Assembly (NCBI RefSeq): GCF_026571515.1 | Contig: NW_026860920.1 | Coordinates: 62,001 to 126,000 of the forward strand | Reading direction: 5' to 3' | DNA from: Ruditapes philippinarum | Taxonomy: Eukaryota | DNA: 64,000 nt | Shown: positions 1 to 59,528 of the stretch, in pieces | Position numbering within the stretch: position 1 is the stretch's first letter | How the letters are laid out: every line of letters starts with the position of its first letter | Made by a program: the position numbers and the translations under genes | Notes under the pieces: model-generated | Seen by the model: only the letters and a program-made list of their open reading frames with translations | Database searches by the model: none | What the model was told of the DNA's origin: nothing

Positions 1-1700
1 ACTTGTACAAAAGGGTATATATCCGTTGTTACTTACAAATAAGACTCACATTTTTGCTCACTGTTTTTTCTTTCTTATTTTTGTTAACGTTGTACTGTAT
101 TTGTAATTTGGATATTATGTTTTTCTCTTCATTTTGGGGGGAATAAAAAAAATTTATTTTTATTTTTATATTTCTTTTCCTATTTTTCCCGTTTTTTTAA
201 AAAAGGGGTCAAACAAACCCAGACTGGGAAAGGGTTTTAATTGTACCGTTTAAAGTGTTCTTTAGGCCCTCTGCTCTTCTCTATTTTACAAAGTAAAGAT
301 GTATGATATGTAATGCCTAATTAATCTACCGCTTTGTTTCTGATGTTATGAAATTGGCAGACCGTAAGACGGACGCATGTTTTATTTCCAAAAACGTGTT
401 AAAAAAGATTAGGAAAGAAACGAGCAAACCAAATCGCACACAACGTCTCAGGAAATTCCCGAAGCTTAACATGCCTGCCTAATAAAAAAGAAAAACTTAG
501 TGCTTTGCGGCTTTGTTGTATGCATCTTTTGTTATACCTATGAAATAAGATTTAATGCATAACACTCGTTTATTCATGGCACAGTTATATCTTTATTAAC
601 CAACTTACAGCTTTTTAAGGACATTTTGACTTTTCATTCATGGATTTACTTCTTAAAGTAAAATAAAAAAAACACAAGTTTTGAAAATTAAGTACAAATT
701 AAGAGCATTATTTTGTCTCTAAATTAATGAACGTGATTTTTATAGGTTATCCAATGGGTTACACTTACAATATACACTATTCTATTCCGTTCATCTTCAA
801 ACAATAGCAAAGTATTATAGAACAAATAATTTTCTCAATCACTATTGACGACAATTATAATTCTAACATTTTCCAAATTACATGTAGATATTGTTGAACA
901 CAAAATAAAAATATGGAGGTGAAGTGTTTCAATCAAATTTCTTAAAACGAGGGTGAACTGTCCGAGTGGTGAAGTGTCTGCAAAAAATTGGCCTTGTGTG
1001 AACTGACTGAGGGGTGAACAGCCTGTAAATCGTTCGAAATCGTGATGACTTCCTTCTCGATATTGACTTTCCAGAGTTTAAAAATAGAAACAGAATCAAA
1101 ATTATTAAAGCTCGCCGATAATTGGCTGTTTGAAAGGTATTAAGAATTTACTCCGTATTTGGTGATGGTCAGATCTAAATGCAGAACGTTATTTACAGCT
1201 GATTTAAATCAGATTGGGTGAATATATGGCCATTTAAACTGGAGATACGAAAAATTTCTTCTTAATAAAGCCTGGTTATCAAATTGATAAGGTAACAGAT
1301 GACAACACATTTGATTTTCCCTGTCATATCTACACAACTACAACTAGACTCCGTTTGGTCGAACTAGGATTGCTCGAATAACTTCATTTGCTCGGAGTAA
1401 TCTCCTGAAAAATCAAATCCCTTTATAATGTTCATTGTGTGTACGAATAAATCTAAAAATTAAAGACAATTAAAGATTGTGTCCAAAATTTAAATCTAGA
1501 GCATATATGGCAAGGTGAGTAGTCCAAACAGCCGAGGTAGATCTTTCAAATTTTATTGGTTGTTATTTAGACCTGCGTAAGTGTGAGATGTCCCTCCTCC
1601 TCCATGTTTAAGACTCTCATACTGTGATTGGCTGAAATCAGTGATATGAAAAATCAAAATAAGAATACTTTCGTGACAACTATGTATGTAAATTCCTTAT
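1..1700. repeat. Segmental duplication: 3' flank of copy A matches 3' flank of copy C (47088-48950)
   Basis: Long colinear near-identity starting at base 1 (ACTTGTACAAAA) and running through the last exon. Confidence 0.9.
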
Positions 1701-4700
1701 CTTAAACAGTACAAAAACAATATTGACAACATAATTTTCTTCAGTTTAAACTTAATTGATAGATCCCTACTCTAATCTTTCATTTGAATAACATTTAGAT
1801 TTAACCACAAACTTTGACATTGCTTTGTTAAAAAAACTTTGTGGTGAAAATTCTTGTTTTTTTTCGTAATTTTGTGATTAAAAAATTTGACAAGTCGGGG
1901 GATATAGGGGATTTATTTAGTTCATTACCTGTCTGGTACTGTGCTGGAATTTGCTGAAGCAGCTGAAGCATAATATAAAATTACATAAATATTGGACATT
2001 TGTTTATGAAATAAGTGACATGGGAAAATGCAATGTTAATTTGTATTCGTTAAATATATATACACGAGTAAATAAAGGTTTTCATATGGTAAATGTTGAA
2101 ATAAATTAAAATGGTTTTACTCCATTGACAGTCCATTCTTTTTAAATATATAGGCAATGCAGCTCACCTTGACAATTAAAATATGAGCATAATATCACTT
2201 TAAAGATTAAATCAAATATATCAGCAATATTTTTTTCCAATACAAACTAATTTTACTTACAATGAAACGTATATTTTTTATTATTTCTTCTGAGTTTCAA
2301 GTAATTGAAAGCAAAATGCGAGATAAAACAACTAACTATGAAATCCGGTAACTTAAACTTGAAAAGTAGCGAAAGGTGATGTCTCTTATTTGTCCTTCCG
2401 TTATAATGTTAGAATTGAAATGACATCGAACCGGTCTGTGCTCATCGATGAATTACTTTCTGTTGTTTTGATGCGGAGATATAAAGAACTCAAGCCTATA
2501 GTCTTCATGAGCCATTACTATGCATCAAACAGATTGGTAATACAAACCTAAACATATCGCTCTGATTTAATATTCCGATTATTGTCAAACTCCATAAAAC
2601 AAAGTTAGTTATGGAATAGTAAACTGTACAGTTTAAAGCCAAAGACTATATAACGATCATATTTATAGTTGGCAGTGTAAATTAAAAAAAACCAAATATG
2701 TTACCATTTAGAGAATCATAAGCCATCCTGCTTTCAGTTTCTGTTCTATTTTGAAATTGTTCGTAGGTATTTCTAAAAAATATTATTTTTCATTATTATC
2801 TATATAAATAATAATAAGATTACGTGATGTGGTCTTGCAAATAACAGTTAAAAATCTGGAAACAAAGTGGGAATAAGCGCACAAACGCAACAGTCATTTT
2901 GAGGTTCTAGTTTATTATCATAAAACTGACAATTTAATAATAGTAATGATACAATAACTCTTCAATAGCCATATGGAAAAGTCAGACAACCATCTCTCAC
3001 TCCCCTCGGAAGCATTAATCACAACAAAATAACATAAGAATTGCAGACTTGGTTTGATTGAGTCTGTACATGAGAGATAATGAATAAGTGCAACATCTCT
3101 CACGACCCCTAGCACCGGCTTGAGCGGTACTCAATTCTCAACACTTAATAGTGCTGGCATCAATGATCCCGAAGGACCAGAAAATATAACAACACTGAAG
3201 TGAAGTACGGGGCAACTTTTTACAGCTGCCATACGGCAATTGACACCTGCTGTTGTGAAGTATAAAAATCTGGAAACAAAGTGATCCCTCGAAAGCATTT
3301 ATTACAACAAAATTACATAAGAATTACAGACTCGGTTTGATTGAGCCTGTACATGAGGGATAATGTTTGATATTCATCTTTCAGCTGCTTTTTATTCCTC
3401 TCATTATTAAGAATTATTAATTAGCAATAATTTAAGTGTGAACTATTCCTGAAATCTATCTTTATTATCTTTAATCATCATGTATATTTAATCATTAAGT
3501 ATATCTAATCATTATGTATATTTTAGTTGGAAAGGAAATAGATGAAACCAATGTTATCAATATATAAAATAAAAAAAAACACTATTTGACGGTACTTACG
3601 GTGAAAGTGACGAACCATTTAATTCTGTGCCGCGTGACACTGATGTTGGCTGATGTTGATTTTGATTCTTCAGACCTATTTCATAAAATAAGATATTAGG
3701 TATGTTAAAGTTTTCAAAATACCGAGTTATTTTATGAGTATCAAGAACATAGATTTCGGTGTCATAAGTCTATCAGTTTTCACACTACTCCTATATATAT
3801 TTTTACTCTATTTTTCAAAGTAAATTTAGAAAATCGTAAACATGACGACATTTAACATTTTAATTGAAACACGGACTTGAATTACAAGGTTTTATTCTGT
3901 AAAAAAGGTATGCGGTATGAAGGGCAGAGTTTTTGATCCTTGTTATTGAAAGTACCTGTTACTGTCCGTTTTCTATTTAAAACAACCCATGTAAAAACCG
4001 CACCGATTAGAACACCAACAATGAGTGAGGCAATGACAATCGCGGCGATAGCTCCTGCTGTTATACTTATCTCGTTTCCATCTGCAATAACAATAGTGTT
4101 GATAGTGCTTGCTCTTAACAACATATCTCTATACAAGGACTTTATTTTAAGACATACCACATACGTGGTACGCCGACCGTTCATGATTCAGAAAACAAAC
4201 ATGTATTTAAAAAGATCTGTGACTAAACAAAATATAACTAATTTTCATGCAAATTTAATTTTTGATTTCACCATATTTAAGGTGAAGATACTTGTCTTGT
4301 CAAGGGAAGTCATCTCCTTTGTGATGTTGTTTGTAGAGGAATCTGTGAACGTTTCATTTAAATACTAGTATCGAAATCACTTTCATAATAAAAACAACAT
4401 CATTTTAAGTAGCAGGTTTTCCACAAATAACATGTAAACATATGAGGTCATACTATTTGCTGAGATGTATATCATTTTCAGAAAGCCCCTGAAAGAATAG
4501 GTCGTAGCCAAGTCCCATATTTCTCCATGATTTTTTTAGTTACCTGATAAGGGAGAGATAAAAAAGGGAAAAATACGGGAAACAGCACTTTCTATATAGA
4601 CTCTTTCATTTACGACCGGATTCAAGTTCTCGCCATTGGATGACGTCATAAGGGGGTACGGTGGACATTGCCGAGACGATTAAGTACATAAATAGAGGAA

Positions 4701-7700
4701 TATAAAGATCTTATTCCTTTCTCTGGTAAGATTTGCAGATTGAAATTGTCAAAATGTTGTGTAATTGAATAACATATTACATAAAAAGGATGCATTGGTC
4801 AAATAAATAAAATGTTTACTAAAATAAAGTAAACGATTTGTTTTAATACTAGACCAAATAGCTGGTTAACTGATCATGAAAACCATTTTCGTTTGATTCT
4901 AAATAATGAAAATTGTCGCACCGTGTTTTACCAGGCAGTTACATCGTACTAATTGCAGAGATGTAGATAGTATATGTCTCTGCTAATATACAGTACCCAA
5001 GAGATATTTTGAGTTTCAAAAAATGTTAGTATTCTGTAGTTTTAAAAAACGGCCGCATAATAATTAATTGCAGGATTCTGGTTGATAAAAAAATATTTTG
5101 ATTTAAGCATAACTAAGACAAAGAAAAACAATAATATAAATCTATGTAATTTCAAAAACATTTAGGCATAAAAAGTAAAAATCCCGTTGTATGGCCCCTA
5201 GGATGATCCATCCAAATTAGGATCATAAATATTTTGATAACTAACAAACGTGATGTAATATGATGTAATTTTATAACTATTTAATATGCACACTGGTGAG
5301 TTATGATATCACAGCCAACTGCCGCTAGTATATACAACATATGCACCCTGTTAATTAATATGTTACGGCCCAAGGGCGCTTTTATACACACCAATTAACT
5401 TAAAAGGTCTTTATTTTCATAGTCATAAGAATTCAATAGATTTGATATATCAAAATTATCTTATCTGCCTCTGTTACGAATCTTACGTTATACATGTCAA
5501 CATTGACAAATTTATTTTCATGTTTGTCACAAATACGCCGGAATTTTCTAAATGACAGAAAATCATACAGAAAACTAGAAAATGACCATTATATTGGGTA
5601 ATTTCACACTGTGTATGGGTGTTCATAAAATATTAAAATTTGATTTAGTAACTAGTTTTTTTCTCTGGCATTAGAGAAAATCTAATAGATGTATTCACTT
5701 TGTAATTCCGCTGTTTTACCTCGTAGCAAGAATTTATCTTAATCTTTGTTTTTATGTTTTTTTTTTATATTTTACTTTCTTGATATTAAATTTATATATG
5801 CATAAGTCAATTTTTTCAGGTTATAATCGTAATTGAACGGTCAGTATTAACGCATTCAACTTTTAATAAGCTATCATTCTATGCGGTTTGTATATTACAT
5901 CACATCCGGTAAGGAAAATCTTCCGTGATGCTTATCGCTTAAATAAAAGGGTCTATAGATGTGAAAAGCGATGGACTTGTCTTAAAGGTGAATAAAACAT
6001 TTTTCAAAAACTGTTACTCATAAACATACGTGTTATTCATTTTAATACCCAGAACAAATTCTTAACTGGTCTGAATTTTAAATCTTACTATAACAAACGA
6101 ACACACATTTACTTAAACTGTTATATACACTGATGAAGTTATAAAATTACTGTTGTGAACATATTGATATTTACCAATTATAAACAATAGGGCAATAATG
6201 GCCCTGAATCGCTCATCAGAAACAACTGGTTTTCCGTGTTAGAAATATTTTTTTCAAATGATCTTTCCGAAAGGCAAGTCCAACTCAACTTGCGCCTCTA
6301 GTTTTATAGTTTCACAATGTTGATTTTTCTCCATAATAAATCTGACCATCATTTCATTGTTCATTGCATTAAATATTTTGTCCTAATATTTTGGAAAGGC
6401 TTTGTTAAAAATAATGTTGCAAGTGTGTTCCTTTGAGACTATGTAGAATATATCACCACACGAGCACGGTAAATTTTGATGGGACAATTTTTGTGAATGA
6501 ATACATGCAAATGTCACATGCAAAATATGTAAGGTGTTGACGTTTGAAAATTATAGTTTAGGAAAAAAACGCTTTTTTATATGGTAACATAACTTACGTC
6601 AACAAGAAATGAAAATAGGTCAAACATAATCAAAAATATCAAAAATAGGCCAGCTGATGTTAGTTCAGTATCAGAAATTACACTTTTGATCCAAATTACA
6701 AGTCTGTATGTCAAAAAAAAGGTCAGATGATGTCAAAAATATCAAATTTAGGTCAGCTGATATCACGATTTACTTCAGCATTAGACATTTAACCCTCGGT
6801 CCAAATGTCATGTCTGTACATCAGAAAGTAAAATAAGTAGGTCAAATAATATCAAAAATATCAAAATTAGGTAAGTTGATATCAAAATTCAATTTGGCAT
6901 CAAAAATTACACATCAGGTCCACATTTGAAGTCTGTACGTCAAAGGGTATGTCAAGCGATATTAAAAATAGGTCAGCTACTATCAAAATTCGATTCGGCA
7001 TCAGAAAAAAACCCTGTTCTGGTCCAAATTCAAAATATGTATGTCAAAAAAACAAGAAAGTATGTGAAATTGTGTCAATAATATAAAGAGGTGAGCTTAT
7101 ATCAAAATTTAATTTGGCATCAGAAATTACATCCCTGGTCTGTACATAAAAACAGAAGGTCAAGTGATATCAAAACTATCAAAAGTAGGCCAGTTGTTAT
7201 TAAAATTCAATTAGGATCAGAAATTACAACCCTTGTCCAAATTTCAAATCTATACATCAAGAAGTGAGAAACTAAGTCAAACGATATCATAAATATCAAA
7301 AGTAGGTTTGCTAATATCAAAATTCAATTCGGCATCAGAGATAACATTCCTGGTCAAAATTTCAAGCCTGTACATCAAAAAACAAGTAAATGAAATGTTT
7401 CAAAAATATCAATAACAACTAACTGATACCAAAGTTCAATAACGAATAAGAAATAGATATAAGGTTCAAAAGTGTGTCCCAAAATTGATAGAATATGCTT
7501 TTTCTAAGTTTGAATCCAATTCAACAAAAAATGAAAAAAAAAAAACAACATTTTTAAACTAAATTAAATAAAAAATGAGCATACAAACTCATCTTTGTTA
7601 GTAAGATACAGGAAACAAATGTAATCTTTTTTAGACCTAATTCTATTTCCAGGAAAAAATCCTGACATACAACTGACCCAGCAGAAAGATTTAATCGTAT

Positions 7701-10700
7701 GATGTAATGGGCTTCAAGTTATTAACACAAACAGAATCTGATTTTATCTTATTGTTACCTAGCTAAACAAGATTGCATTTGTGAAAAAATGCGATGTCAC
7801 TACATCACTAAATAGTACCAGAAATATATGTTTTTTCTATACAATTGAACTTTGCCATAGTGCAGTAATGTCTAGTGAGATTTAGGGTCAATGTCATATT
7901 TGAGTTTGTCAAATGAATGACAATGTGCAGATATGTTTACTGTTCAGATACAAAGCACATAGTGTAAATAATTGATTCAGTATAAAGTATTCTTACTTGA
8001 CAAAAAAATAACTTTTTTACAAGGTAAACGATAACATAAACAAAAGCAAATACAAATTTACTTGTAGAAAATGAGGGATAACAATATTTTTCCCTAACTC
8101 AGACGACTCCCAGAAATAATCTTAATTTTAGGCAACATTTGAACACAATATCATACATAAATAATCTGTTTTTACACTTTACTTTTTCTGTTAGATGTAA
8201 GCTTGGAAATGTTAATATGATCGACCAAGTACATATAAAAGAGCATTGAACAAGTTTTTACCTGTTGTACTATCTGTATCTCCATAACTAGGGTTATCTG
8301 AAATAAAAAAGTAAGACAAAAATCAATAACTTACAAGAAAATAAAAGCAAGGTTATAAGTTTCAAATAAACAATTCATTTAATTCTGTGCATACTTATGC
8401 TTTTGTTTATGTTATCGTTTGCCTTGTTACAATTCTAGAGGTTTTAAAAAAGAGGTCAATGATGTGTTAATATATCTACGTTGATCCCTGGAGATTCCGT
8501 TCAACTTTCCTTTTTTTATCGAAAATTGCTTATAAATTTGTAAGTAGGTTTTCAATTAGTCTTCATTACATTATAAGTGACGGACCGTTGAAAGATTCAT
8601 AGGAAGGTTTTTATTCTCTCTCTAGTTTACATCCTTGTAGGCTCAAATGATGTTTCCAATCTGGTCTTTAAATCCTTTTGCTCATGAATATGTATTATAT
8701 TTCACGTTGTAGAGGGCTTAAAAGTGTCCTTACGATACTTGTTGACAACTAAATTAGGATGAAACAGATTTGCCTATGTGGTGCAAAATTCAAGAATATG
8801 ATCTACTTAGGATAAGGTTCAGAGGTGACTTCTTTAAGAGGCAAACAAAGTCCTTTTTCAAACTGTCTTTAAAAATACAGATATATAAATCTGCCATACA
8901 ATCATTAAAAGTTTATTTTATGTTCATGTATGTTTACATATACATATAGTTATGCTTAATATATTTTAAGAATAGCTGACTATAGAAAGTCAAAGATGTC
9001 ATAAATTGTACAAACATGATAGTTATTTGTAGGTTGATTAATAACAAGTAAAAGTTAAAACGACTTTCTTTTGATTAGCTCTGAAAATATTTCTTACGTG
9101 TCATGTTATAATATTTCCTGTTATACACAAACAAATGCTCAATGTTATAGAAAACTTACTGACGTCAGTATAAAATCTCGGATTGTTTTCAGAGATATAA
9201 GTGTTCCCCGGATACGGATCTCCGAAAACTAAAACGTAACATTCAAAAGCCAGATTGTTATCTCTATTAGCATCAGCTGCTGTTGTGTTGTATCTGATTG
9301 AAGCTTCTCGTGTATATCCACACTGGTTGTCACTATTAGCTGTGCCTTCATCCACAGAACCTTGTGGTGGTTGATAGCCAATAAAGTCATCATTTTAGGA
9401 AGTTTCTGATGTTCTATGCCATCGAATAAATGTTCCCGGTAAGCTTCCTATATTAGCAGTACATGTACATCCACATTAGCCATGTAAGATGGTGACATTC
9501 CTTCTACTATAAAACCATTCTTCCTTACAACTAATGATGTCACTTGAGGTTTTACTAGAATGTCAAAGCAAAAAAAAACAACATAATTGAAATATTTTCA
9601 TAAAAGTAACAGTAAAATTAAATTGCTTTTTCCTTTTTCATATTTAAATGATCAATTCTCAAAAGAGTGATACCATAGAATGTTTCTGTTAACACACGGA
9701 TATTGGACATTATGAGAATTGAATATTCCAGAGGAAAATATTGTTCTGTTATCTTAAGCACTGCTTTATGCGTTCAACAATGATTTTGTATGCCATTTAC
9801 TTTCTGACTAAAACTGTCACTGTAAAACTTAAATGGAAGAAAACATCAAATGGATACCATATCATAAAACAGCAAAATATCAAACTGTAATTTTCAGTCA
9901 CTTCCAGATTTTTTCAAGTCAGTTGTATTGATATATTGTATTACATAGTAAAGGTACAATATGATTCTTCTTTTTCCTTTTCTGCAAGCCATTTTTAATT
10001 ATTGAAATTATTGTTATTTATTTTTATCTAACCACTATTCAAACAAATTCTTATGTGAAAGATCTTCCAGGCATTCTTAAAATAAAACGTACCATAAGCT
10101 GAGAAAGTGGCTTTCCTTTTAACATCAGTACTTGTTTATTTGTGGAGCTTTTATATGTCAATTCACATCTATAATACCTGGCATCATCACAAACTAACTT
10201 CTCCATGCTCATAGACAATGTAAGAACTGTGTTAGCTGGTGTTGTAGAATCCCATGATCCTCCAGCAACATAATCTTTAGTATTTGATACTACATCACCA
10301 CCTAATGTAGGAGTTTCATTTATTCCTGCTTCCATTAATGCTAATGTCTGCCAATCATTAGGATCTGATCCAGAAAGCGTGGTTGATTTGAGTCTTCTTA
10401 TCTGTATAAGGTAAATATCTGTAACATCTGTTTCAGTGATATCGCATGTCATAGTTAATGTTCCTGTGCTGCCAAGTAAAACTCTCTCCCTGCTAAAAGT
10501 AAACTCCACACCAGAAACTGTAAATGTAATAATGGGTATAAACATTGTATTTTTCCAAATCGTTCACCAAACATGGTGCGAGGTTACTACGTTTCAAGTT
10601 CTGAGAAAATAAATCTTGATATTTTGTAAAGGGTACTTTTGTTTGCATTAAAAAATTTTATCAAAATTTTAAAAGAAAAACATTTTTTCAAGAATGGAAA

Positions 10701-10917
10701 TATCTTTTCAAAAAATGTTTATAAAAATATATTTTTAGAACAAAAGGTCTCTATACAACAAAAACAGCGTGACCATAAAAATGGTCAATGTATACCACTG
10801 CAAATAATTAGTGCTAAATCAGTATAAAATGTTAATTGTAATACGATTACAAAACTACATACCTTCAAAGAAAGTTAAAGCTGTAAATAAAACAAAACTT
10901 TTAAAAACGTCCGACAT
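1553..10917 (-). pseudogene. Copy A: disrupted Ig receptor paralogue (full two-Ig membrane form not encodable)
   Basis: Exons: 10863-10917 (MSDVFKSFVLFTALTFFE), 10093-10517 (425 nt, -1 frameshift near 10135), 9160-9554 (395 nt, 19-nt deletion versus B plus TAA at 9395-9397), 8262-8297, about 4291-4342 (putative), 3956-4081 (TM), 3600-3675, 2705-2772, 1929-1962, 1553-1631. TM and tail exons are still open. Confidence 0.82.
6183..7460. repeat. HINE/Helentron-like element carrying about 8 tandem units of 105-120 bp (6600-7460)
   Basis: Start motif AACAATAGGGC..GCCCTGAATCGCTCA. Units GGTCAAATAATATCAAAAATATCAAAATTAGGTCAGCTGATATCAAAATTCAATTCGGCATCAGAAATTAC..GGTCCAAATTTCAAGTCTGTAC. Confidence 0.65.
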
Positions 10918-11010
10918 TTTTCTTTGATTTAAATAATCTTCCTTCTTCTCTTTGTAAATCAAACTGTTTATATCCAAAATATAAATACATGTACTAATAA
11001 ATATTCATAT

Positions 11011-26944: not shown

Positions 26945-27027
26945 TTTGCCTACGATTTAAATAATCTCCTTTCCTCTCTTAATTAATTCAACTTTTAAAT
27001 CCGAAATATAAAACATAGATTGATTTT

Positions 27028-42977: not shown

Positions 42978-43017
<40 letters not shown>

Positions 43018-45539: not shown

Positions 45540-46200
45540 CAAACTCCATGTGGCATGATAATAGTCCAGTAAAATATACAGAATTATGCCACAATCCATG
45601 TGACATGATATCAGTAAATAGACCCGTAATTAAATATAAAAAAATGCCAAAATCCATGTGACATGATACCAATGCTGGACCAGTAAAACATAAAGAATAA
45701 TGCCACAATTAATGTGACATGATATCAGTAATATAGCAGATATATATACAGAATTATTCAAAAATTCATGTGACAAGATATAAATAATGGACTAGTAGAA
45801 TACACAGATTTATGCCAAAATCCATGTGACTTTATGTCAATAATGCACCAGTGAAATATACAGAATTATGCCACAATCCAAGTGACATGGTATCAATAAT
45901 GTTCCAGTAAAAGATGCATAATTATGTCACGATTTATGTGACATGATATCAACAATGGTTCAGTAAAATATACAGAATTATGGCTCAATCCATGTAACAC
46001 GAAATCAATAATGGATCAGTAAAATGTACAAAATTATTGCCACAATCCATGTGACATGATACCAGTGCTGGACCAGTAAAATATAGAGAATTATGCCACA
46101 ATCCATAGAACATGATATCAATAATGGACAAGTAAAATTATAGATTAATGCCAAAATCCACGTGACATAATATCAATTATCGACGACTAAAATATACAGG
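45540..46200. repeat. 56-bp VNTR, about 12 units (copy D intron 8)
   Basis: TCCATGTGACATGATATCAATAATGGACCAGTAAAATATACAGAATTATGCCACAA at 56-nt period. Confidence 0.92.
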
Positions 46201-46499
46201 TAAGTGCAAAAAAGATATGCTATTAAATATAAATAACGATCAATTAAATTGTTCGCAATTTAAATTAGAAACAAAATTGTAATACCGTCAAGGGAATCAT
46301 AGGTTATCCTGATTTCAGTATCTGTTCTATTGTGAAGTTGTTCTTAGATATTCCTAAAAATAAATTATAAAAAGATTTTGTGATGTGGTCTTGCAAATAC
46401 GACTGTGTTTAATATTATTCATCTTTTTTATTATAAAACTAATAATTATTATTTTGTAACAATTTACAATTTATGTGAGAAATATTTCTGTAATTCATT

Positions 46500-46650: not shown

Positions 46651-46676
46651 TAATTCTCAATTAACTCTCTTAAGTA

Positions 46677-48737: not shown

Positions 48738-51700
48738 TTATTGGTTGTTATTTAGACCTGCGTAAGTGTGAGATGTCCCTCCTTCTCCACGTGTAAGACT
48801 CTCATACTGTGATTGGCTGAAATCAGTGATATGAATAAATAATTTAAAAACGCCAGGGTTCTAACATAAGACGCGAAATGTTATAAATGTTTTAATTATT
48901 AAAGAAATTAAGATAAAAATAATTTCGTGACAAATATGTTATTTGTATGTAAATTCCTTATTCTAATTATTTACTAAAACATTATTGACAACAGTGTTTA
49001 CTATAGTTTGAAATTCATGATTTAGTTCATTACCTGTCTTGTACTGCGCTTGAATTCGCTGAAGCTGAAGCAGAATACAAAATAACATAAATATGGGACA
49101 CTTGTTTATTAAATATGTGACAAGGGAAAATGCAATGCTAATTTGTATACATTAAAAATATTGGATTTCACATGGTTTATGTTGAAATAAATCAAATTAC
49201 CTTTAATGAATTTAGAAATGATGCATGCATATAACTACGAGGTATGTTCAAAAAGTTCGTGAATTTTTGCTGTCATTTAATTAATTTAATTAAAATAATA
49301 TTTTATTTCATTTATCAGGATATATGCGTATTTACAATTAATAATTTTTATTTGTATTACGTGTATTTACCCTGGTCTGTTTTATAATTAATGCTAGCCG
49401 GTGTTCAGTAGATTTACCGTATAAAATAATTGTCAGTTGATAAAATATTTTTCTTTATCATTGATAATTATATTATTAAAAGATCGGACGAGGGCGGTTT
49501 CAAATTGATACTATAAATCAACAATTGAATTAACTTAATAACACTGTCTGTTAAGTGTCGAAATTACTCAAAAATATCGATAAAGAGCGGAAAGTATGCG
49601 GCACTCGGACCTTAATACGGAGAAAGGAGCAAAAAGGTTACCACTTTATATCTCGGGTCATCATCACAAACAGAAAAATGGTTTTGGTATATGATCCGCA
49701 GATATTAAACACTGAAAAGAGTACATTCAGAAACAATGACGCTGGTAAAATGTTTCATTTATATTGCGACGTCACGAACGTCATTTTGTTTCATCATCAG
49801 CGTGCGCCGGATTTAGCACCCTTTGTGAATTGTAACTGTCACAGAATTATTATTTGTAAACATATTGTATTGATTTTTTCACTGTTTATTAAGGACATAT
49901 TTTCATATATGTCTCTTGTAAAATCATATACGCAAATTAAAAGATGTGAACAGTAGAACCGGAGTCCACGAACTTTTTGAACAGCCCTCGTATATTGCTA
50001 GATGACTTTCAGGAACAAATAACAATGACCAAGTTTAATATTCCAGAATTTTACCGATATGATAACAATAAATAATAGCAAAGAATTCCCCAGGCGCTTT
50101 TAGCGCATCGGCGCCGATGCGCTAAAATTTCAGAACAAGAAATCCCGATGCGCTTAAAATTATCATAGCGCTTTAAAAAATGACCGATATCCCTTTCTTC
50201 TGTGTCTATAAGTAACCCCAATTAGCCAAATAAACAAGCCAATATACATGTCCTGTGTAGATAATTACCCGAGGCGTATACACAACCCGATACACTGATT
50301 GCCTTTATACTGTGTGACGTCACATACACCTGTCATCGATGTCTGCAGACGACTGTTCGTGCACTTTTATGTGTTGTCAATTACCGTGTATTGAGATGGG
50401 TGCAATTTAACCGCGGCATGTGTGATATTTACATGTTTCAGGTAGGTGTAATAACTTTTATTGCTTTGATAATATAATTGGCATTAATTGACATGCGATA
50501 TAACAGTTTGATATTTAGGGGTGAATGGGTTAATTGTCTTGATAGAAGCGTAATGTTCAATTTCATCTTTCACTTTCTTATGATCGTTACGTCTAAACAG
50601 TAGTATACTGTAGTATTAAGATTTCAAAAAATAATATGTCTAACAATAAGGGAAGCCTAGTTCACTATCAATTTTAAGAGGTTTTTTTGTGAGCAATGTC
50701 GTTGAAACTGTCTCAGGATCATTTTGCTTTTTTTTTTCTTTTTTTACTCTTGGATTAAACTGCATAGATATTCAGAAATAAATTTGGTTGATGGCTACGT
50801 TAACATTGAAAACATTTACGACTGTTCATTATCAACTTGCAAATGAGTGAAAACAACAACAAAAACTTTACATCAACAATCCCACTTAGTGACAGCCAAT
50901 TGGTCATTTTCTTTTTTAATTAAACATATCTTGTAATCTGTGTCTGTTCAGTGAATCCCCAAAATGAAAAAAATATTAACTTTGCAGGCCCTCTTTAATC
51001 GAGCTTTGTGAAGTGCAATCTACTGTCCTACCCCTTAGCATTGGTTTGTCAGAACATACAGGAGCTGGCCAGGCACTTTGGTGTAGATATGGAGCAGTGC
51101 CGCAGCCATTGGCACCAGGTACGTGCCAGTCTAGAGGGGACTGATCAGTCAGCCGACCAGACCATGACCTGGATTACTGGCAATCTTTCTACCAGTCATC
51201 CAGTTCTTTACAGAATTGCTGCTGTGAGTCTCCTCCTCCCAACCTCTACTGCAGGTAAGCATTATTAAATTCATTCATTCTTGAACATTAATGAAATTCC
51301 AATGACAGTTGCAGATGTGTAACACTTTGCTAGAAGTTTTCAACATTTCAAATATAATTTTTTTTTACTTAGTTAAGTTTAAATAGGCTTGAAGTTTTAA
51401 ATTTTCAAATATTCACATCAAAACAACAATATAAATAAAAGACATGAGGTTAACATAAATGATTACTTTCATTTATTCATTTCAGATTTTGAGCGAGGAT
51501 TCAGCTGCCTGAAGAGAGAGTTAAGACTGAAAATAGGAATTGTTCTCTGTTAAAGTTCTGAACTATCTTCTTGCCGTCTCCCTTTAAGGACCCCCATTAG
51601 AATCTTTCAACTTTGAGAAGGCAGTCAAGGCATGGAAGGACAACAAACCTAGAAGACAGGCCCACTTTTAATGATGTTAATGAAGAAAAAACAACTGAAA

Positions 51701-54700
51701 TATACTCATTTAAATGGGACACACACATACATATAAATGTTGATCACATGTTGTGAACTTGTGTTTATATATAATTGTTTATTTATTTGAATTGTTGGAA
51801 ATGGAAAAAGTAAATAATAAAAATTAAGAAAATGTTTATCAAGTGAAAAGCTTTCATTATTTGTTTTAAAACAGCCCACAGCAGTATCTTGACACCTTAA
51901 ATGGCAAAAATTTTCGACACGCGGTATGGGGTCAAGACCCCCTCCCGCACCCACCCCCGTCTTATTAAAAAATGTAGCGCTTAAAAAAAATCCTGGGGAA
52001 TTCCCTGTAATAGTTTATGCAAAAGTATTCCAATATCAACTGTTGACCCATTATCATTATGACAGTCAATTGATTGAAATATATAGGCAATTAAGCTAAT
52101 GTTGACAATGAAAATATGAAAAAATGTCACTTTAGATAAATTGTTCACGTTTAAATTGATTAAACATTCAACTATACACATTGGAATACATATTAAGTAT
52201 CATTTGTCTAAATAAAGTCATAATATACAAGTATGTGATATTATAAACAGGCATGACATTTATTAAATGTGTTAAATATTAAAGTTTGCAATTCATCTCA
52301 TATGGAAGGTTGAAGACTGGTTTATGAACCTTCTCAAGTAAATAAACAATTTTAATTTTTTGTTTAGGAAATAGATATCAATTCTGAGTGCATTGTTGTA
52401 GAATAATGCACGGTTTGAGTTCAAATGCGTAGTAATATTATCACGAAGGCCGATAGGCCTGAGTGATTAATTACAAAGCATTTGAACGAAAAACGTGCAT
52501 TATTATACAATAATGCACGAAGAATTAATATCTATTTCCATTGTAACACGTCAAGAAAAAATATAATTATTATTATAAAGTTGGACTTTATGTTTGGCGG
52601 TTAAATTTGTTTTCGCCTCAGAGTTGCCAATAGAAACATTCTTTAAAGGCCGTTCCAGTGGGTTGAAAAAAACTGTCGTTAAATCTACCGTGTGTAGAAA
52701 CATTTTGGGAATAACGAATTTTGAAAACGTTGATAAAACTTTATTTGTTTTTTTTTATTTCAGTCTATAATTTTCCAAGCGAAATACAAATTATTAAAAG
52801 TGAAATAAATGTAAAACTTAACTCGTCTGCGACGTTAAAATAGCGTACTTGATTTTGATTGTTTTGCACGTGCTGTTTGGCGCTACATTGTGACGTCACG
52901 TAAACAACACTTTAAACGTCTGTACAGCGTTAACGACTGAATTAAAGATATTGGTGTTCGGATTTATTTTCTTAGTTAGACCATTTTCTTTCATTCTAGA
53001 TAGTTTTCACAACAAAATTCGACAAAAAATTGTTTTTATTTACCAGATTTTTCAAACAAAATGGCGCCCTCAATTTGAAAATATACAGGGAGATAATAAG
53101 AATGGCGAGTGCATTGTTGCAGAATAATGCACGCTTCGGGCCTTCTTTGTTTAAATAGAAAAAATTCCGATAGTGTTAGAATGATTAATCGATAAAAAAT
53201 AATAAAGAATAAAAGAATTCTGGAAGACTGAACAGACTTACTATACTTAGAATGAAACAGCTATTTTATTATTATATCTACTAAGCAACCCTGGTCAGAA
53301 GTAGTATCTGTAGAAAATCAAGATAACTCTATAGATTTGTTCACTGATAAATGTTTGTCTGTCCTTGAAAAACATGCAGCAACCAGGGAAAAAACGAGTA
53401 AAGAAGGTCACCCAACCAAATTGGATCAATAAAAACATCATCGATGCTATTAAAACAAAACACCAGTTTCATAGAGTTAATGACACATATAATTACAACA
53501 TATGGAAACAACACGTTAAGTCGCTCATATATGATTCTAAGCGACAATATTATAATGATACTATCAATCAAAACAAACACAACCCAAAGAAATTATGGAC
53601 TGGTAATGAATAATATGGTTACAAATCCAAGGTTCAAACACATTTTATTGATGATGATGATGGCAACCCTGTTACTGACCCTTTTATCACTGCAAATTTA
53701 TTCAACAGACAATTTGCGAATCTCCACCAATCCCATCAGATCATTAATCAGACTGGTTATGAAAATCCTGAGCTTGTTGAACTAAATGCATCTAAACTTT
53801 AGCATATACCCCCTTTCAAAATACCTAAAATAGTGCTCACTTATTTGTTGAACCAATTAAAATCGATTGATATTACAAAGTCTTGTGGGTCAGATGGTAT
53901 CAGTGCAAGGTTTCTAAAGTTATCGACCCACATTATTGCTCCTATATTTACCACTATATTCAGTAATAGCATTCTAAACACTACAATTCCTAAATCATTC
54001 AAAAATGCCAAAGTCATTCTTATACATAAAAAAGGTTCTAAAAATGATAAAAGAAATTATAGGCCAATTTCCATACTTCCCTTGATATCACTTATTCTTG
54101 AACGTCATGTCATATTTAAAGCAATACCTTGAGAAATATCAACTTCTTTACCAACGTCAGTCTGGACTCAGGTCAAATCATTCATGTCAAACTGTATTGA
54201 TTAGAATTATTGATGATTGGCTATTGACAAAAATGAAATAGTTGGTTCAATTGTCCTTGATCTCTCTAAAGCTTTTGACTATGTGGATCACTCTATTATT
54301 ATTGAAAAGCTTTTAATGTATAACCTAGATTTGGTTTTCCTCCTATATAGATTGCAAAACTCAACAAACTACATATCCGGTTTATATTCAGAGTCAAGTT
54401 CAGTAACTACTGGTGTTCCTCAGGGCTCAGTGCTAGGTCCTATACTGTTTTTAATCTATACCAATGACCTGCCTTTGTCTATGGAACAAACAGAAACTGA
54501 TAATTTTGCTGATGACACCGCCCTTTCAACCTCTGATGTATCGCTTAACAGAGTAGTTGAATCTCTTACTCATGATCTTTTAAATGCCAACCAATGAGGT
54601 GATTTGAATCGCATGTCTATCAATGTTAACAAAACTAAGGTTATGTTTATTTCCTCAAAACACAAGCAAAATTATATTCATGAAAGTAATGATCCTTGTA

Positions 54701-57700
54701 TTTCATATAAAACAGAACAAATTTTTTTGTAGCTCTGAAGAAAAATTATTGGGTATTACAATTAACAGCACCTTGTCTTGGCAAAGCCATATTGATAATG
54801 CTATTAAAAATGTAACTAATTGTTACATTTTTATCACGTATAAAATTATTCATATCTATACCTGTACGTGCAATGTTTTACCATATCTTACCACATCTTG
54901 ATTATTGTTGCATAATTTACGGTTACTGTACGTCTTTTCTAGAAGATAAACTCATTAAGTTCCAAAAGAGAGCTGCAAGACTAATTCAAGACAAAGATTA
55001 TGACACTCCATCTGCTGAACATTTTTCGGAACTCCGCTGGATGACATTTTTACAGAGGGTTGTTTTTCAAAAAGCTATTATGATGTTTAAAATAATGAAT
55101 AATCAGGCGCCTTCCTATTAATTGAATAATTTCATTTTATCGTCAGATGTTCATACTCGCTTTTTGCGTTCAATGTCTGATTTTCAACTTAATACGCCTA
55201 GTCCAAATACTGAACAATTTCGTAAGTCTTTTGTTTATTCTGGATCTTGTATTTGGAAGGCCTTCCTGATTTTATTAAGTCTGCTACATCTGTGAACAAT
55301 TTTAAAACTTTATACTTGAGGTATTATCACACATTGATGTATACAAATTAATAATCTCCTGTATGTTTTAACATTTATGTCTTTTAATAGTTAATAATAT
55401 GTTAAATTTATATTGTTCCTTGTTGAGGGCCTCATGGAAGATTGATATGTTTGTTCAAATGAGTTCTCTCGTTAAATAAAGTCTTTATAATAATTATTAT
55501 TATTTATTTAGCGAAAGTAAAATGCTAAATAAAATAACATAATATAAAACCCGGCAACTTAAGCTTGATAAGTAGCGAAAAGTGAGGTCTCTTATTTGTC
55601 TTTTCATTATCATGTTAGAATTGAAATGACAACGAACTTGTTTGTGCTTATCTGTATATGACTTTCTGTCGCTTTGATGCGGACATTTTAAGACCTCCAG
55701 TTAACTGTCTTCGTGATCAATTACGACGCATCAAAACGACAGATAGGTCGTAAAAAACCTAAAGATACCTCTCAGACCGATATTGTTTCTTAAATATATA
55801 TATAAATGTCAAATTCCATGTGGCATGATAACAATAATGGACCAGTAAAATATACAGATTAATTCAAAACTTCATGTGACATGATATCAATAACGGACCC
55901 GTAAAATACACAACTTAATGCCAAAATCCAGGTGACATGATATCAACAATGGACCAGTAAAATATATAGAATTATGCCACAATCCATGTGACATGATATC
56001 AGTAATAGACCAGTAAAATATAGAGAATAATGCCACAATCCTTATGACATGATATCAATAATTGACAAGTAAAATAACAGATTAATGCCAAAGTCCACGT
56101 GACATGATATCAATAATGGACCACTAAAATATTCAGTTAAGTGCAAAAATCCATGCTATTAATTTAGCAATAACTATCAATGAAATAGTTCGCAATGTAA
56201 ATAAGAAAACAATTGTAATACCGTCAAGGGAATCATAGGTTATCCTGCTTTCAGTATCTATTCTATTTTGAAGTTGTTCGTAGGTATTCCTAAAAAAATA
56301 TTAGAAGATTTTGTAATGTGGTATTGCAAATTCGGCTAGGTTTAATATTATTCATCTTTTTATTACACTAATAATAATTATCATTTTGTAACAATTTGTT
56401 TATGTGTGAAATATGTATGTAATTCATCTTAATTATCTTTCATCATTAAGTGTATTTAATAATTAAGTATATTTAGATGTAAGTGGAAAAAAAACATTGA
56501 AAAAAAACAACAACAAAAAACAAAAAAGAAACAAACAATATCAAAAAAGAAACAAACATTATCATCTATCTTAAAAAAAATAAAATCGATAAATGATGGC
56601 TACTCACGGTGAAAGTGACGGAACATTTAATTCTGTTTCTCGTGTTGGCTGATGTTGATTTTGACTCTTCGGACCTGTTTTTAAAAAAATGGGTTATCAG
56701 TTTTTCTCATTTCTAAAACAAAATCTGGACTGTTTTATGAGCGTCAAAAACACAGATTTCGGTGTCATTAGTCTATTATTTTATCGAATATCTAGTTCAC
56801 ATCACGACCTTTCAAATACATTTTAACTTTTTAAAGTAAAATTCGAAAATCATAAATTGATATTTAACAAGTTAATTAAAAGTACCTGTTAATGTTCGTT
56901 TTCTATTTAAAATAACCAATGTGAAAACCACGCCAATAAGAACACCAACAATTAGTGAGGTAATGACAATCGCGGCGATAACTGCTGCTGATATACTTAT
57001 CTCGTTCCCATCTGCAATAACAATTGTATACACTTATTTCATGGGTGTTTGTGGAACGGTTGCCCCGAGGTATCAGGGATCACATTTTGAATGTTGCAAA
57101 TGGCATCCCTGATACCGAGGACACCAAACAACCATGCAATAATTATTTTATTTACTAAAACTTTGCAATCAAAAAAAAACAATTTATACTGTAACAACAT
57201 ACTAATAGCATTTTTACAACTGTTGTAATTTCCTACAGACGAACAACTACCGTACATTAAGCTGAGCGACGTTTGATAACAGAAATACCCTAAGACGTCG
57301 ACAGGGGTGAAGCAGTAAAATAATATTGGCAGGTCAACAGTTCATTCATCATTGCGCATGTACAGAATTTCAGCGTTCATTTAAACAGTTGTAAATTTAT
57401 AGAAGGGCATAAGGTCATAACACTATATAAGTCTCTTAACATACGTAGTACGCAGAGAGTTTATGAGGTAGATATTATTCTTACTTATTTACTAAGAAAT
57501 GATACCTAAACTATGTTAAGCTATACCTAATTTAATGCTATTATAACAGCTATAATTGGTAAAATGTTGTTTTCTTAATTTTATGATTGACTAACAAAAG
57601 AGTAATGTTTCTGTTTTTAAACTCACATGATTTATACGCTAACAGTATAAAATGTTCTTGAAGAAAATATTATGTTCCTATTTTAAGCAATGATTTTGTA

Positions 57701-59528
57701 CACGTGACATAAGCCAGTAAGGAAATATACTTACATATTTTCTTTTATACATGTATTTTGTTATTGTTCTTTTCATATTTTTTTTAACAGCAGGTAGCAT
57801 ATATAGCAAAGAGAAACGCATGCATTGAGAATTTATACAATGAGGATTCAAAGTCCTTTATTCGTGATAATTATTGTTGGTTGTTAAGATATATGGGGTC
57901 ATTTTAACTGCTGAGATACATATCAGAAAGTTCCTGAAAGAATTTGCAGCTGCAAATCTACAATAGGAGAGCATTGAAGTTATTGTTTTACCTGTTGTAA
58001 TCATAGTATTACCTGAATCTTCACTACATGGGTTATCTGTAAAAGAAAAGGTAGACTTAAATCTATGAATTATATATAAAACAGATGTACTGATTTTCAA
58101 ATAAAAACCTTATTTGTTTTTGTGCATACTTATACTTTTATTAATGCTATCCTTTGGCTTGTAATTATTCTAAAGGTTGTTAGATAAGAGGTCTGTGATT
58201 GGTTAATATATCTGTTATATTGAATCCTGAAGATGCTGTTCAACTTCAATTTTTATCGAAACTTACATATAAAAATTTGAAGGTATTCAAAATAGTCTTC
58301 ATTACGTAATGAGTAACGGACCTTTGATAGAGTCATAGGAGCTTTTTGGTCTATTTTCACATCTTTGTAGAATCCAACTAATCATACAAAAGGATGTTTC
58401 ATATCTGCGGATGTTTCTAAATTCAAATTTTCACTATTTCATGTTTAAATGTTGAATTCTGCTTAAGCCGGTGTTAGGGGGTGTGGACGGTAAATTGCAC
58501 TTTCCAGTACCGTCCATGAACAGGCTCAATCAAACCGAGCCTGCAACATTTTCAATTTTGTCGAGTTGGGCTTTCTTTATGGATTCTGTATTTATCTATC
58601 TTTTAATCCTTTTGTGCATGGGTAACAGCAAGTGATGTGCGTTATACGTCACGTTATAGAGTACTTAAAACTTGTTAACAACTGAAAAAGGGTAAAAGAG
58701 ATTTACCAATGTGGTGCAAAAACAAATGATACGATTTACTTAAGATTTCATAGTAGTTGAATGTGGATAAAATGTCAAGACGTTTAATATCTTTTACGCT
58801 TCTTAAAGTGACCTTTCCAAACCGCTTTAAAAACACAGATATATAAATCCTATAAACAATTTTAAAATTTAATTTATATTCATGTACATTGTATGTTTTC
58901 ATATTGAATTCATTCCGAAAATATTTTCAGAAAAGCTGACTATTTTGAATGTCAATGATCACATAAATTGTACAAATATGACAATTATTCATAGGTTTAT
59001 AAATGACAAGTTAAAATTAAAACGACTTTCTTTTGTTTAGCACTGACAATATATCTTACGTATCAGGTCATAATATTATCTTTTATACACAATTTATCTA
59101 TGTGATAGATAACTTACACACTTCAGTATAAAATCTCGGATTGTTTTCTGAGATATACGAGTTTCCATATGGATCTCCGCTAACTGTAACATAACACTCA
59201 AATGCCAGATTGTTATCCCTATTTGCATCAGCTGATGTTGTGTTGTATCTAATTGAAGCTACTCGTATATATCCACACTGATTGTCACTGATTGCAGAGC
59301 CCTCATCAAATGTACCTTGTGATGGTTGATATCCAATAAATTCATCATTTTGGGAAGTTTCAGATGTTCTATGCCATCGAATCATTGTTTGTGAAGAGCT
59401 TCCTATATTAGCAGTACATGTGAATTCCAACTCATCTCCTACGTAAGCAGTGGCCATGTCAGACGGTGACATTCCTTGTACAATGCAACCATTCTTCCTT
59501 GCAACTAATGATGTAACTTGTGGTTTAA
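48738..59528 (-). CDS. Copy C: paralogous Ig receptor, 5'-partial (exons 1-2 lie beyond the window end)
   Basis: Exons: 59118-59528 (Ig2), 57992-58036, 56886-57011 (TM: [35 protein letters not shown]), 56608-56674, 56222-56289 (NTYEQL..ITYDSL), 49034-49064, 48738-48816 (SQYESL..HTYAGL*). In frame, GT-AG. Sequence at 61830-64000 is colinear with copy B intron 2 (23590-25633). Confidence 0.82.
49238..49990. mobile_element. Tc1/mariner-type non-autonomous element (MITE)
   Basis: TIRs CGAGGTATGTTCAAAAAGTTCGTG and CACGAACTTTTTGAACAGCCCTCG, TA TSD. Empty site ATAACTA|TATTGC in copy D near 44667. Confidence 0.88.
50079..52007 (+). mobile_element. Internally deleted hAT DNA transposon
   Basis: TIRs CAAAGAATTCCCCAGG and CCTGGGGAATTCCCTG; TAATAG duplicated on both sides. 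Spliced hAT dimerisation-domain remnant [19 protein letters not shown]|[17 protein letters not shown] (51196-51540, GT-AG intron about 51255-51485). Confidence 0.85.
52362..53180. mobile_element. Non-autonomous insertion with internal inverted and direct repeats
   Basis: GAGTGCATTGTTG(T/C)AGAATAATGCACG at about 52386 and 53107, with an inverted copy near 52494. Absent at the paralogous site in copy D (about 45125). Confidence 0.6.
53286..55502 (+). mobile_element. Decayed 5'-truncated CR1/L2-group LINE in copy C intron 8
   Basis: [63 protein letters not shown]; AATAAA plus TAA/TTA-rich tail. Empty site visible in copy D near 45229. Confidence 0.92.
55812..56155. repeat. 56-bp VNTR, about 6 units (copy C intron 8)
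   Basis: Same unit as 45540-46200, at 55817, 55873, 55929, 55985, 56041 and 56097. Confidence 0.92.
58407..58597. repeat. Dispersed ~190-bp repeat family member (related copies at about 3040-3150, 3320-3365, 36230-36400, 37530-37670, 47290)
   Basis: Shared GCTTAAGCCGGTG(C/T)TAGGGGG and CAGGCTCAATCAAACCGAG motifs. Absent from the homologous site of copy B (about 21935). Confidence 0.7.
59118..59528 (-). CDS. Copy C exon 3: C-like Ig domain
   Basis: 411-nt exon inside ORF 59098..59592. About 81% aa identity to copy B Ig2 by manual count (26 differences in 138). Confidence 0.9.

What the first reader, a model, noticed from the sequence alone, without database searches (positions are those of the whole stretch)
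1553..59528. Tandem cluster of invertebrate V-C Ig receptors with a double ITAM-like / ITIM tail
Seen: three paralogues plus a fragment share SP-IgV-IgC-stalk-TM-tail. The tail sits in micro-exons invisible to the ORF track. In B it reads [21 protein letters not shown]...[19 protein letters not shown]: four conserved YxxL motifs in two pairs (spacers 11 and 9-10 aa), each pair in its own exon. SQYESL (all copies) and ITYDSL (C, D) also fit the ITIM consensus S/I/V/L-x-Y-x-x-L. Known: paired YxxL motifs recruit tandem-SH2 kinases (Syk, Shark) and ITIMs recruit SHP phosphatases. Inference: an expanding innate immune or allorecognition receptor family, evolving by birth and death, that carries its own signalling motifs. 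I cannot assign it to a named gene.
Basis: partly seen in the sequence, partly recalled or inferred. Interest (0 to 1): 0.88.

Follow-up and report, generated by a model that had tools for sequence, protein, structure and literature searches.

The report
Clam two-Ig receptors with paired-tyrosine tails
This stretch of the Manila clam genome holds a tandem cluster of cell-surface receptor genes with two antibody-like domains and a tail with four conserved tyrosine docking motifs; the genes are real and already annotated but unstudied, and they resemble known invertebrate immune-type receptors.

Summary
All genes lie on the minus strand.

- **Copy B (16.4-26.9 kb)** is a complete nine-exon gene: signal peptide, V-like Ig, second Ig, stalk, TM and four small tail exons (70, 68, 31, 76 nt). 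All splice sites are canonical and all phases fit.
- **B is already annotated.** It matches, exon by exon at 100%, RefSeq XP_060552609.1, "uncharacterized protein LOC132713922" of Ruditapes philippinarum (430 aa). NCBI's gene model therefore makes the same TM-to-tail joins.
- **Copy D** is open in all seven exons inside the window. Its V exon lies about 2 kb past the window end.
- **Copy A** is a pseudogene, and the 41-46 kb piece is a dead tail-only fragment.
- **Family size:** about 21 open V exons and 21 open second-Ig exons in this genome. Relatives occur in Mercenaria mercenaria.
- **Tail conservation:** tails are only about 35% identical between the two genera, yet all four Yxx[L/I] and both spacers (11, and 9-10) are kept.

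The fold model confirms a V plus C2/I-like pair. The genome also carries one SH2-SH2-kinase locus and one SH2-SH2-phosphatase locus. The ITAM-like reading is plausible but unproven. The ITIM reading is weak. No RNA reads could be obtained. The scan noted similar receptors elsewhere in this genome. Verdict: a new member of a known kind.

The parts
26890..26944 (-). Copy B exon 1: signal peptide (MSDIFK...FE, donor G|GTAAGT, phase 1)
   Evidence: 100% match to residues 1-18 of P0052
26153..26575 (-). Copy B exon 2: V-like Ig domain
   Evidence: P0052 model residues 19-159 align to antibody V domains at Z 11-12, rmsd 2.5-3.4 A
22277..22690 (-). Copy B exon 3: second Ig domain (C2/I-like; Cys-Trp-Cys triad)
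   Evidence: 100% match to P0052 residues 160-297; about 21 open full-length copies of this exon in the genome
21510..21554 (-). Copy B exon 4: 45-nt stalk exon (NPSNGVTDSVMSTT), phase 1 to 1
19593..19703 (-). Copy B exon 5: transmembrane helix plus KRKR stop-transfer
   Evidence: helix 321-344 in the model
19313..19382 (-). Copy B exon 6: 70-nt cytoplasmic exon, phase 1 to 2
   Evidence: 100% match to P0052 residues 350-373
18961..19028 (-). Copy B exon 7: tail exon 1, NTYEQL-x11-YDSL (first YxxL pair), phase 2 to 1
16700..16730 (-). Copy B exon 8: 31-nt micro-exon (SANSSGVPH), phase 1 to 2
16446..16521 (-). Copy B exon 9: tail exon 2, SQYESL-x9-YAGL (second YxxL pair) and stop
48738..59528 (-). 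Copy D, the seven exons inside the window, all open with canonical sites. Second Ig 59528..59118; stalk 58036..57992; TM 57011..56886; 67-nt exon 56674..56608; tail 1 56289..56222 (ITYDSL); micro-exon 49064..49034; tail 2 48816..48741 plus stop. The V exon lies outside the window.
   Evidence: V exon at C9407:128050-128478
1553..10917 (-). Copy A, pseudogene. SP 10917..10863; V 10517..10093 (425 nt, wrong exit phase); second Ig 9554..9160 (395 nt, in-frame stops); stalk 8297..8262; TM 4081..3956; 76-nt exon 3675..3600; tail 1 2772..2705 (YEQF, YDSL); micro-exon 1962..1929; tail 2 1631..1556 plus stop.
41166..46353 (-). Tail-only fragment. Tail 1 46353..46286 has TAA in place of the first Tyr codon. 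Micro-exon 41454..41425 has a 1-nt deletion. Tail 2 41238..41166 is of another subtype (SQYESL...KYADL). No SP, Ig or TM exons.
53444..54901 (+). Decayed reverse-transcriptase ORFs of a retroelement, antisense inside the 7-kb intron of copy D between tail 1 and the micro-exon
   Evidence: RVT_1, E 7e-13

Best explanation
The window holds part of a tandem cluster of a venerid-clam gene family. Each gene encodes a type I membrane receptor: signal peptide, a distal V-like Ig domain that varies among copies, a better conserved C2/I-like Ig domain, a short stalk, one TM helix, and a disordered tail of about 80 residues encoded by four small exons. The tail carries two ITAM-like modules, Yxx[L/I]-x11-YxxL and YxxL-x9/10-Yxx[L/I], about 20 residues apart.

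Proposed mechanism (inferred): ligand binding by the V domain clusters the receptor. A Src-type kinase phosphorylates the paired tyrosines. Each doubly phosphorylated pair docks the tandem SH2 domains of a Syk/Shark-type kinase and activates the cell, for example phagocytosis by haemocytes. An SHP-type tandem-SH2 phosphatase is the likely counter-reader.

The family evolves by tandem duplication, decay and exchange of 3' cassettes.

Shown: gene structure, Ig folds, family size, conservation of tyrosines and spacers, and candidate reader genes in the genome. Inferred: expression site, phosphorylation, which SH2 protein binds, the ligand, and any immune role.
For: - Gene B is identical exon by exon to RefSeq XP_060552609.1, with canonical splice sites and compatible phases.
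- The AF2 model has pLDDT about 90 over residues 20-300, a TM helix at 321-344 and a tail below 50.
- Two-domain structural matches: CD166 D1D2, Lutheran, B7-H6, Rst and nectin-3/-4 D1D2, at Z 12-12.7 and rmsd 3.3-5 A over 205-223 residues. Domain 1 alone matches antibody V domains.
- Pfam: Ig_3 in 16 of 20 and V-set in 10 of 20 family members.
- Four Yxx[L/I] and both spacers are kept in Ruditapes and Mercenaria, although the tail is only 35% identical between genera. All four tyrosines of B's tail are in YxxL.
- Mean identity among Ruditapes copies is 61% for V and 77% for the second domain.
- About 21 open V exons and 21 open second-Ig exons, plus broken ones.
- Colinear exon hits give SH2-SH2-Tyr kinase on C560 and SH2-SH2-PTP on C10217.
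- Precedents: oyster CgIgR, an Ig receptor with its own ITAM, recruits CgSyk (PMC6994640). Hydractinia Alr genes carry ITAM/ITIM tails (PMC9546547).
- More distant bivalve proteins with the same V-C module carry other ITAM-like tails: Mactra YTNL-x7-YMDI and Saccostrea YEVL-x8-YDRV.
Against: - No RNA reads could be laid, so expression and junction usage rest on NCBI's gene models and on sequence logic.
- Neither spacer fits the strict ITAM rule (6-8). They fit only the relaxed 6-12 rule.
- Upstream acidic residues are poor at motifs 1 and 4.
- YxxL is also the generic YxxPhi sorting signal and a generic SH2 site.
- The best structural matches are adhesion molecules as much as immune ligands.
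- B's own Pfam scores are below the curated cut-offs.
- Some paralogues lack the tail or TM, or have a different tail.
- Copy counts may be inflated by uncollapsed haplotypes.
Confidence: 0.55

Rival explanations
1. Cell-adhesion molecules of the nectin / CD166 / IrreC-Roughest type. The two Ig domains mediate cell-cell contact, and the YxxL motifs act mainly as YxxPhi endocytic sorting signals or generic SH2 sites, not as ITAM-like units.
For: Top structural matches are CD166, Lutheran, nectins, Rst and SYG-1 D1D2. One RefSeq model (P0096, 'syg-2-like') joins a C2-set Ig ectodomain to the same TM-tail cassette. YxxL fits YxxPhi by rule.
Against: - Adhesion families of this type are usually few and conserved. 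Here there are about 20 or more copies with pseudogenes, restricted to one clam family, and the distal domain diverges fastest.
- Sorting signals need no fixed pairing, yet both spacers are conserved across genera.
- There is no nectin-type C-terminal motif; B ends NQDR.
Confidence: 0.2
2. Mainly inhibitory receptors. Phosphorylated SQYESL (ITIM-fit), alone or with a neighbouring motif about 20 residues away, recruits the tandem-SH2 phosphatase (SHP/Corkscrew type) and dampens activation.
For: SQYESL fits [S/I/V/L]xYxx[I/V/L] in all four window copies and most Ruditapes paralogues. An SH2-SH2-PTP locus exists. The Y2-Y3 distance of about 20 residues is in the range used by paired ITIM/ITSM receptors (my knowledge). 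Oyster ITIM-bearing Ig receptors are described (PMC11999971, PMC11841013).
Against: The -2 residue is not conserved: AQYEKL in Mercenaria, THYERL in one Ruditapes paralogue. Motif 2 is MIYDSL in the intact copy B. What is conserved is the pairing and spacing within each exon, which is the ITAM-like feature.
Confidence: 0.15
3. The tail exons are not used, or the genes are not expressed. In that case the motifs are relics carried along by recent duplication and the gene models are prediction artefacts.
For: The copies are recent duplicates, so some conservation is expected by descent.
Against: Exons are more conserved than flanking introns, and their indels are multiples of three. Tyrosines and spacers persist in another genus at 35% tail identity. 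Dead copies in the same window show what decay looks like: stops and frameshifts. RefSeq lists several isoforms for paralogous loci.
Confidence: 0.04

Closest known systems
CgIgR of the Pacific oyster ('BCR-like' Ig receptor; PMC6994640)
   Same: A bivalve type I membrane IgSF receptor that carries an ITAM in its own tail. It is reported to bind bacteria, dimerise, recruit CgSyk and drive ERK signalling and phagocytosis.
   Different: CgIgR has five Ig domains and one ITAM (YTEL-x8-YEKL). The clam family has two Ig domains (V plus C2/I-like) and two ITAM-like pairs with spacers 11 and 9-10, in a large tandem family.
Hydractinia Alr allorecognition family (PMC9546547)
   Same: A clustered, fast-evolving family with many pseudogenes. 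It has a divergent V-set-like domain that Pfam barely detects, I-set-like domains, a TM helix and tails with ITAM or ITIM. Syk/Shark and SHP homologues are present in the genome.
   Different: It is a cnidarian family with different domain counts and an Fn3-like domain. Its tails are too diverse to align, whereas the clam tail is one conserved cassette. Clams are not colonial, and no allorecognition phenotype is known here.
Drosophila Draper and human FcgammaRIIA (my knowledge; Draper also cited in PMC9546547 and PMC4503800)
   Same: Receptors that carry their own ITAM with a long spacer (about 11-12 residues). They still use a tandem-SH2 kinase (Shark, Syk) for phagocytosis.
   Different: Draper has EGF repeats, not Ig domains, and each has a single ITAM. 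Homology of the tails is not implied.
Nectin / CD166 / Lutheran / B7-H6 / Rst-SYG-1 D1-D2 pairs
   Same: They are the best structural matches to the modelled ectodomain, as a V domain followed by a C2/I-type domain.
   Different: Sequence identity is only 12-17%. Those proteins have other domain numbers and other tails. A shared fold shows no function.

Membership tests
IgSF V-set domain (domain 1) | Beta-sandwich with a B-F strand cysteine pair and the D-x-A/G-x-Y/F-x-C motif | tested here: met
   LTLRC ... DDARTFKC in B. C43 and C136 are nearly invariant in 20 members.
IgSF V-set domain (domain 1) | Structural match to V domains | tested here: met
   Model residues 19-159 align to scFv/antibody V domains at Z 11.3-12.1, rmsd 2.5-3.4 A over 107-119 residues.
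IgSF V-set domain (domain 1) | Pfam V-set score above the curated cut-off; invariant Trp in strand C | tested here: not met
   B's V exon has no Pfam hit, and A's scores 14.6 bits against a cut-off of 26. Ten of 20 members hit V-set at E<0.01, best 2.6e-6. The strand-C Trp is replaced by I/L (IYNIQI, by reading).
IgSF C2/I-type domain (domain 2) | Cys-Trp-Cys triad and an Ig profile match | tested here: met
   C197, W211 and C271 are nearly invariant. Ig_3 hits 16 of 20 members, best 7.6e-12. B itself scores only 16.6-17.9 bits, below the cut-offs. The assignment as C2, I or V-like is not resolved.
ITAM | Yxx[L/I]-x(6-8)-Yxx[L/I] (strict spacing) | tested here: not met
   Spacers are 11 (pair 1) and 9-10 (pair 2) in all copies.
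ITAM | Relaxed rule Yxx[L/I]-x(6-12)-Yxx[L/I], as used for oyster CgIgR (PMC6994640); x(6-9) in PMC9546547 | tested here: met
   Both pairs fit x6-12. Pair 2 of B (x9) also fits x6-9. The spacing is conserved in Ruditapes and Mercenaria.
ITAM | A tandem-SH2 kinase (Syk/Shark type) binds the doubly phosphorylated motif | not testable with these tools
   Only the presence of a candidate gene is shown: SH2, SH2 and Tyr-kinase exons are colinear on C560, 172-188 kb, plus strand.
ITIM | [S/I/V/L]-x-Y-x-x-[I/V/L], conserved in relatives | tested here: inconclusive
   SQYESL fits in A, B, D, the fragment and most Ruditapes paralogues, but Mercenaria has AQYEKL. ITYDSL occurs only in D, the fragment and P0047, and B has MIYDSL. 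An SHP-type SH2-SH2-PTP locus exists on C10217.
Nectin-type adhesion molecules | Three Ig domains and a C-terminal afadin-binding motif (my knowledge) | tested here: not met
   There are two Ig domains, and B ends ...GLNQDR.

The most novel reading that the evidence does not exclude
The TM-plus-tail unit is a portable signalling cassette. All its exon boundaries are in exchangeable phases, the [70-nt + tail 1] module is duplicated in one paralogue, and the whole cassette may be attached to an unrelated Ig ectodomain in another. On this reading the family forms a polymorphic paired-receptor system (signalling, tail-less and alternative-tail members) used for self/non-self discrimination in clams, for example against transmissible neoplasia or parasites.
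Probability: 0.1. Interest if true: 0.8.

Novelty: new member of a known kind. Interest (0 to 1): 0.45.

Why it matters
Bivalves lack antibodies, yet they resist dense microbial exposure, parasites and even contagious cancers. How their blood cells turn recognition into activation is known from only a few oyster receptors.

This family offers a second, independent case in a farmed clam. It is a large, fast-turning set of two-Ig receptors. The tail keeps two paired-tyrosine modules with fixed, non-canonical spacing across genera, and candidate Syk-type and SHP-type readers exist in the same genome.

It gives a concrete test of how much spacer variation tandem-SH2 signalling tolerates outside vertebrates. 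It also gives a set of candidate loci for disease-resistance studies. It is not a new principle: Ig receptors with their own ITAM or ITIM are already described in oysters and cnidarians, and the genes here are already annotated, although unnamed.

Tried and rejected
- **RNA evidence.** No spliced reads could be checked.
- **Fetching tail regions of the other ~20 genomic copies.** Tail conservation therefore rests on RefSeq proteins, not on all genomic copies.
- **Direct IgC-to-TM splice.** I first assumed this join, which is in frame. The 45-nt stalk exon in between was found only from the database protein.
- **Pfam on single exons.** It gave only sub-threshold Ig hits. The Ig assignment rests on the family-wide scan and the fold model.
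- **Joined exons.** Exons were searched one by one by reference. The full-length protein used for alignment and folding is the database entry P0052.
- **Literature.** A search for Syk in this clam found nothing.
- **ITSM, hemITAM, NPxY and nectin C-terminal motifs.** Considered by reading and not found in B.
Full report
**What is in the window.**
The window has 30-33% G+C and no N runs. A self-comparison shows repeated gene-sized units on the minus strand. Translated searches with the long ORFs locate the following:
- V-like exons at 10.5 and 26.6 kb
- a second Ig exon at 9.5, 22.7 and 59.5 kb
- TM exons at 4.1, 19.7 and 57.0 kb

**Gene B.**
Reading the DNA and aligning the copies gives nine exons. 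Every boundary is AG/GT, and the phases are 1,1,1,1,1,2,1,2.

| Exon | Coordinates |
|---|---|
| Signal peptide | 26944..26890 |
| V | 26575..26153 |
| Second Ig | 22690..22277 |
| Stalk | 21554..21510 |
| TM | 19703..19593 |
| 70-nt exon | 19382..19313 |
| Tail 1 | 19028..18961 |
| 31-nt micro-exon | 16730..16700 |
| Tail 2 plus stop | 16521..16446 |

The phase logic forces the two small exons. The TM exon leaves in phase 1 but tail 1 enters in phase 2. Tail 1 leaves in phase 1 but tail 2 enters in phase 2. Exons of the right length and phase sit exactly where the copies are best conserved.

**Independent confirmation and identity.**
A search of 1.84 billion representative proteins with B's second-Ig exon gave only 42 hits, all checked ones from bivalves. 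A follow-up search returned P0052. P0052 is RefSeq XP_060552609.1, [quoted passage not shown], 430 aa, on a 154,265-bp contig. All six exons that tblastn could match to it (signal peptide, V, second Ig, the 70-nt exon, tail 1 and tail 2) are 100% identical to the window; the V hit as a whole scores 92% only because it runs past the exon ends.

So the window is Manila clam DNA. NCBI's gene model makes the same TM-to-tail joins and adds the stalk exon I had missed.

Whether that model rests on transcripts could not be checked.

**The other copies.**
- **D** is open in all seven exons inside the window, with canonical sites. Its V exon lies at window-equivalent 66050-66478, is open, and is 82% identical to B's. 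A decayed reverse-transcriptase element sits antisense in its 7-kb intron.
- **A** keeps good splice sites and open TM and tail exons. However, its V exon is 425 nt and exits in the wrong phase. Its second-Ig exon is 395 nt with in-frame stops. It is a pseudogene, and its first motif reads YEQF.
- **The fragment** at 41-46 kb has only tail 1 (TAA replacing the first Tyr codon), a micro-exon with a 1-nt deletion, and a tail 2 of a different subtype.

**Family.**
The genome (1.41 Gb, 15,874 contigs) has 45 matches to the second-Ig exon and 42 to the V exon. About 21 of each are full length and open; the rest are broken or partial. They lie on about a dozen contigs, and there are five copies plus the fragment on this contig. 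Haplotype duplicates may inflate these numbers.

RefSeq lists at least 14 loci in R. philippinarum and about ten in Mercenaria mercenaria. All are "uncharacterized" apart from misleading automatic names.

More distant proteins with the same V-C module occur in Saccostrea, Potamilus and Mactra. There the module is repeated, or fused to EGF repeats or adhesion-GPCR bodies.

**Fold.**
An AlphaFold2 model of P0052, built with a 20-member alignment, has pLDDT about 90 over residues 20-300. It has a TM helix at 321-344 and a low-confidence tail. Foldseek and VIA-align give these matches:
- Two-domain matches to CD166, Lutheran, B7-H6, Rst and nectin-3/-4 D1D2, at Z 12-12.7.
- V-domain matches for residues 19-159, at Z 11-12.

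Pfam finds Ig_3 in 16 of 20 and V-set in 10 of 20 members, but B's own scores are below threshold.

**Tail.**
In the 20-protein alignment, every member with a full-length tail keeps four Yxx[L/I/V/M] motifs. Spacers are 11 and 9-10 in both genera, although tail identity between genera is 35%. In B, all four tail tyrosines are in YxxL.

Tail exons are 88-90% identical between B and D or A, against 67-85% for flanking introns. Length changes in the small exons are multiples of three.

The ITIM fit is uneven. SQYESL holds in Ruditapes, but Mercenaria has AQYEKL. ITYDSL is sporadic.

**Readers.**
Pfam-profile scans of the genome show two relevant loci:
- SH2, SH2 and Tyr-kinase exons colinear on C560 (172-188 kb), which is the Syk/Shark architecture.
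- SH2, SH2 and phosphatase exons on C10217 (57-72 kb), which is the SHP architecture.

These are exon hits, not gene models.

**Interpretation.**
The structure is that of an immune-type IgSF receptor that carries its own signalling motifs. The most likely mechanism is ITAM-like recruitment of a tandem-SH2 kinase. Precedents are oyster CgIgR-CgSyk (PMC6994640) and, from my own knowledge, the long-spacer ITAMs of Draper and FcgammaRIIA. An adhesion role with sorting signals, or an inhibitory role through SHP, remain open.

The mean identity among copies is 61% for V and 77% for the second domain. That fits a variable recognition domain on a conserved scaffold.

**Novelty.**
The genes are annotated but unstudied. 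The kind is known from oyster CgIgR and CgIgIT2 and from Hydractinia Alr (PMC11999971, PMC9546547). First-stage notes of this scan describe similar ITAM-like Ig receptors elsewhere in this genome; I did not check them.

Noticed in passing
P0096 (RefSeq 'synaptogenesis protein syg-2-like', R. philippinarum, contig of 263,843 bp; not in the window): A 704-aa model joins a different, C2-set-type multi-Ig ectodomain to a TM-plus-tail cassette 64% identical to B's, with three of the four motifs intact. It is either exon shuffling of the cassette or a chimeric gene prediction that uses a tail-only fragment like the one at 41-46 kb.
   Followed up: partly
P0058 (LOC132751732 isoform X2; not in the window): The [70-nt exon + tail 1] module appears twice in tandem, giving six YxxL motifs. 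The module enters and leaves in phase 1, so it can be duplicated or skipped without breaking the frame.
   Followed up: no
window 30491-32534 (+): Several adjacent ORFs have reverse-transcriptase matches (RVT_1, E 5e-11). This is a decayed retroelement in the 13-kb gap between copy B and the tail-only fragment.
   Followed up: partly
window 431-1653 vs 47625-48838: The 3' ends of A and D, including non-coding flank, are 89% identical, while A versus B is about 72%. Tail exon 2 comes in three subtypes within this one cluster (A/D type, B type, fragment type). This suggests exchange or separate duplication of 3' cassettes.
   Followed up: partly
P0052 residues 128 and 244 (window V exon and second-Ig exon of B): Each Ig domain has a third, nearly invariant cysteine (KLVCDD in domain 1, NQCGY in domain 2) besides the canonical pair. 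These could form an inter-domain or inter-chain disulfide.
   Followed up: no
P0054, P0055, P0056, P0064 (paralogues elsewhere in the genome): Family members exist with a different acidic Tyr-rich tail, with no TM or tail, or with the V domain only joined to stalk-TM-tail. This is the kind of mix seen in paired-receptor families.
   Followed up: no
window 61948-62320: Direct repeats at 61947-62089 and 62191-62320 (82% identical) lie in D's V-to-second-Ig intron. Another first-stage note calls this a small LTR-like element (TRIM).
   Followed up: no
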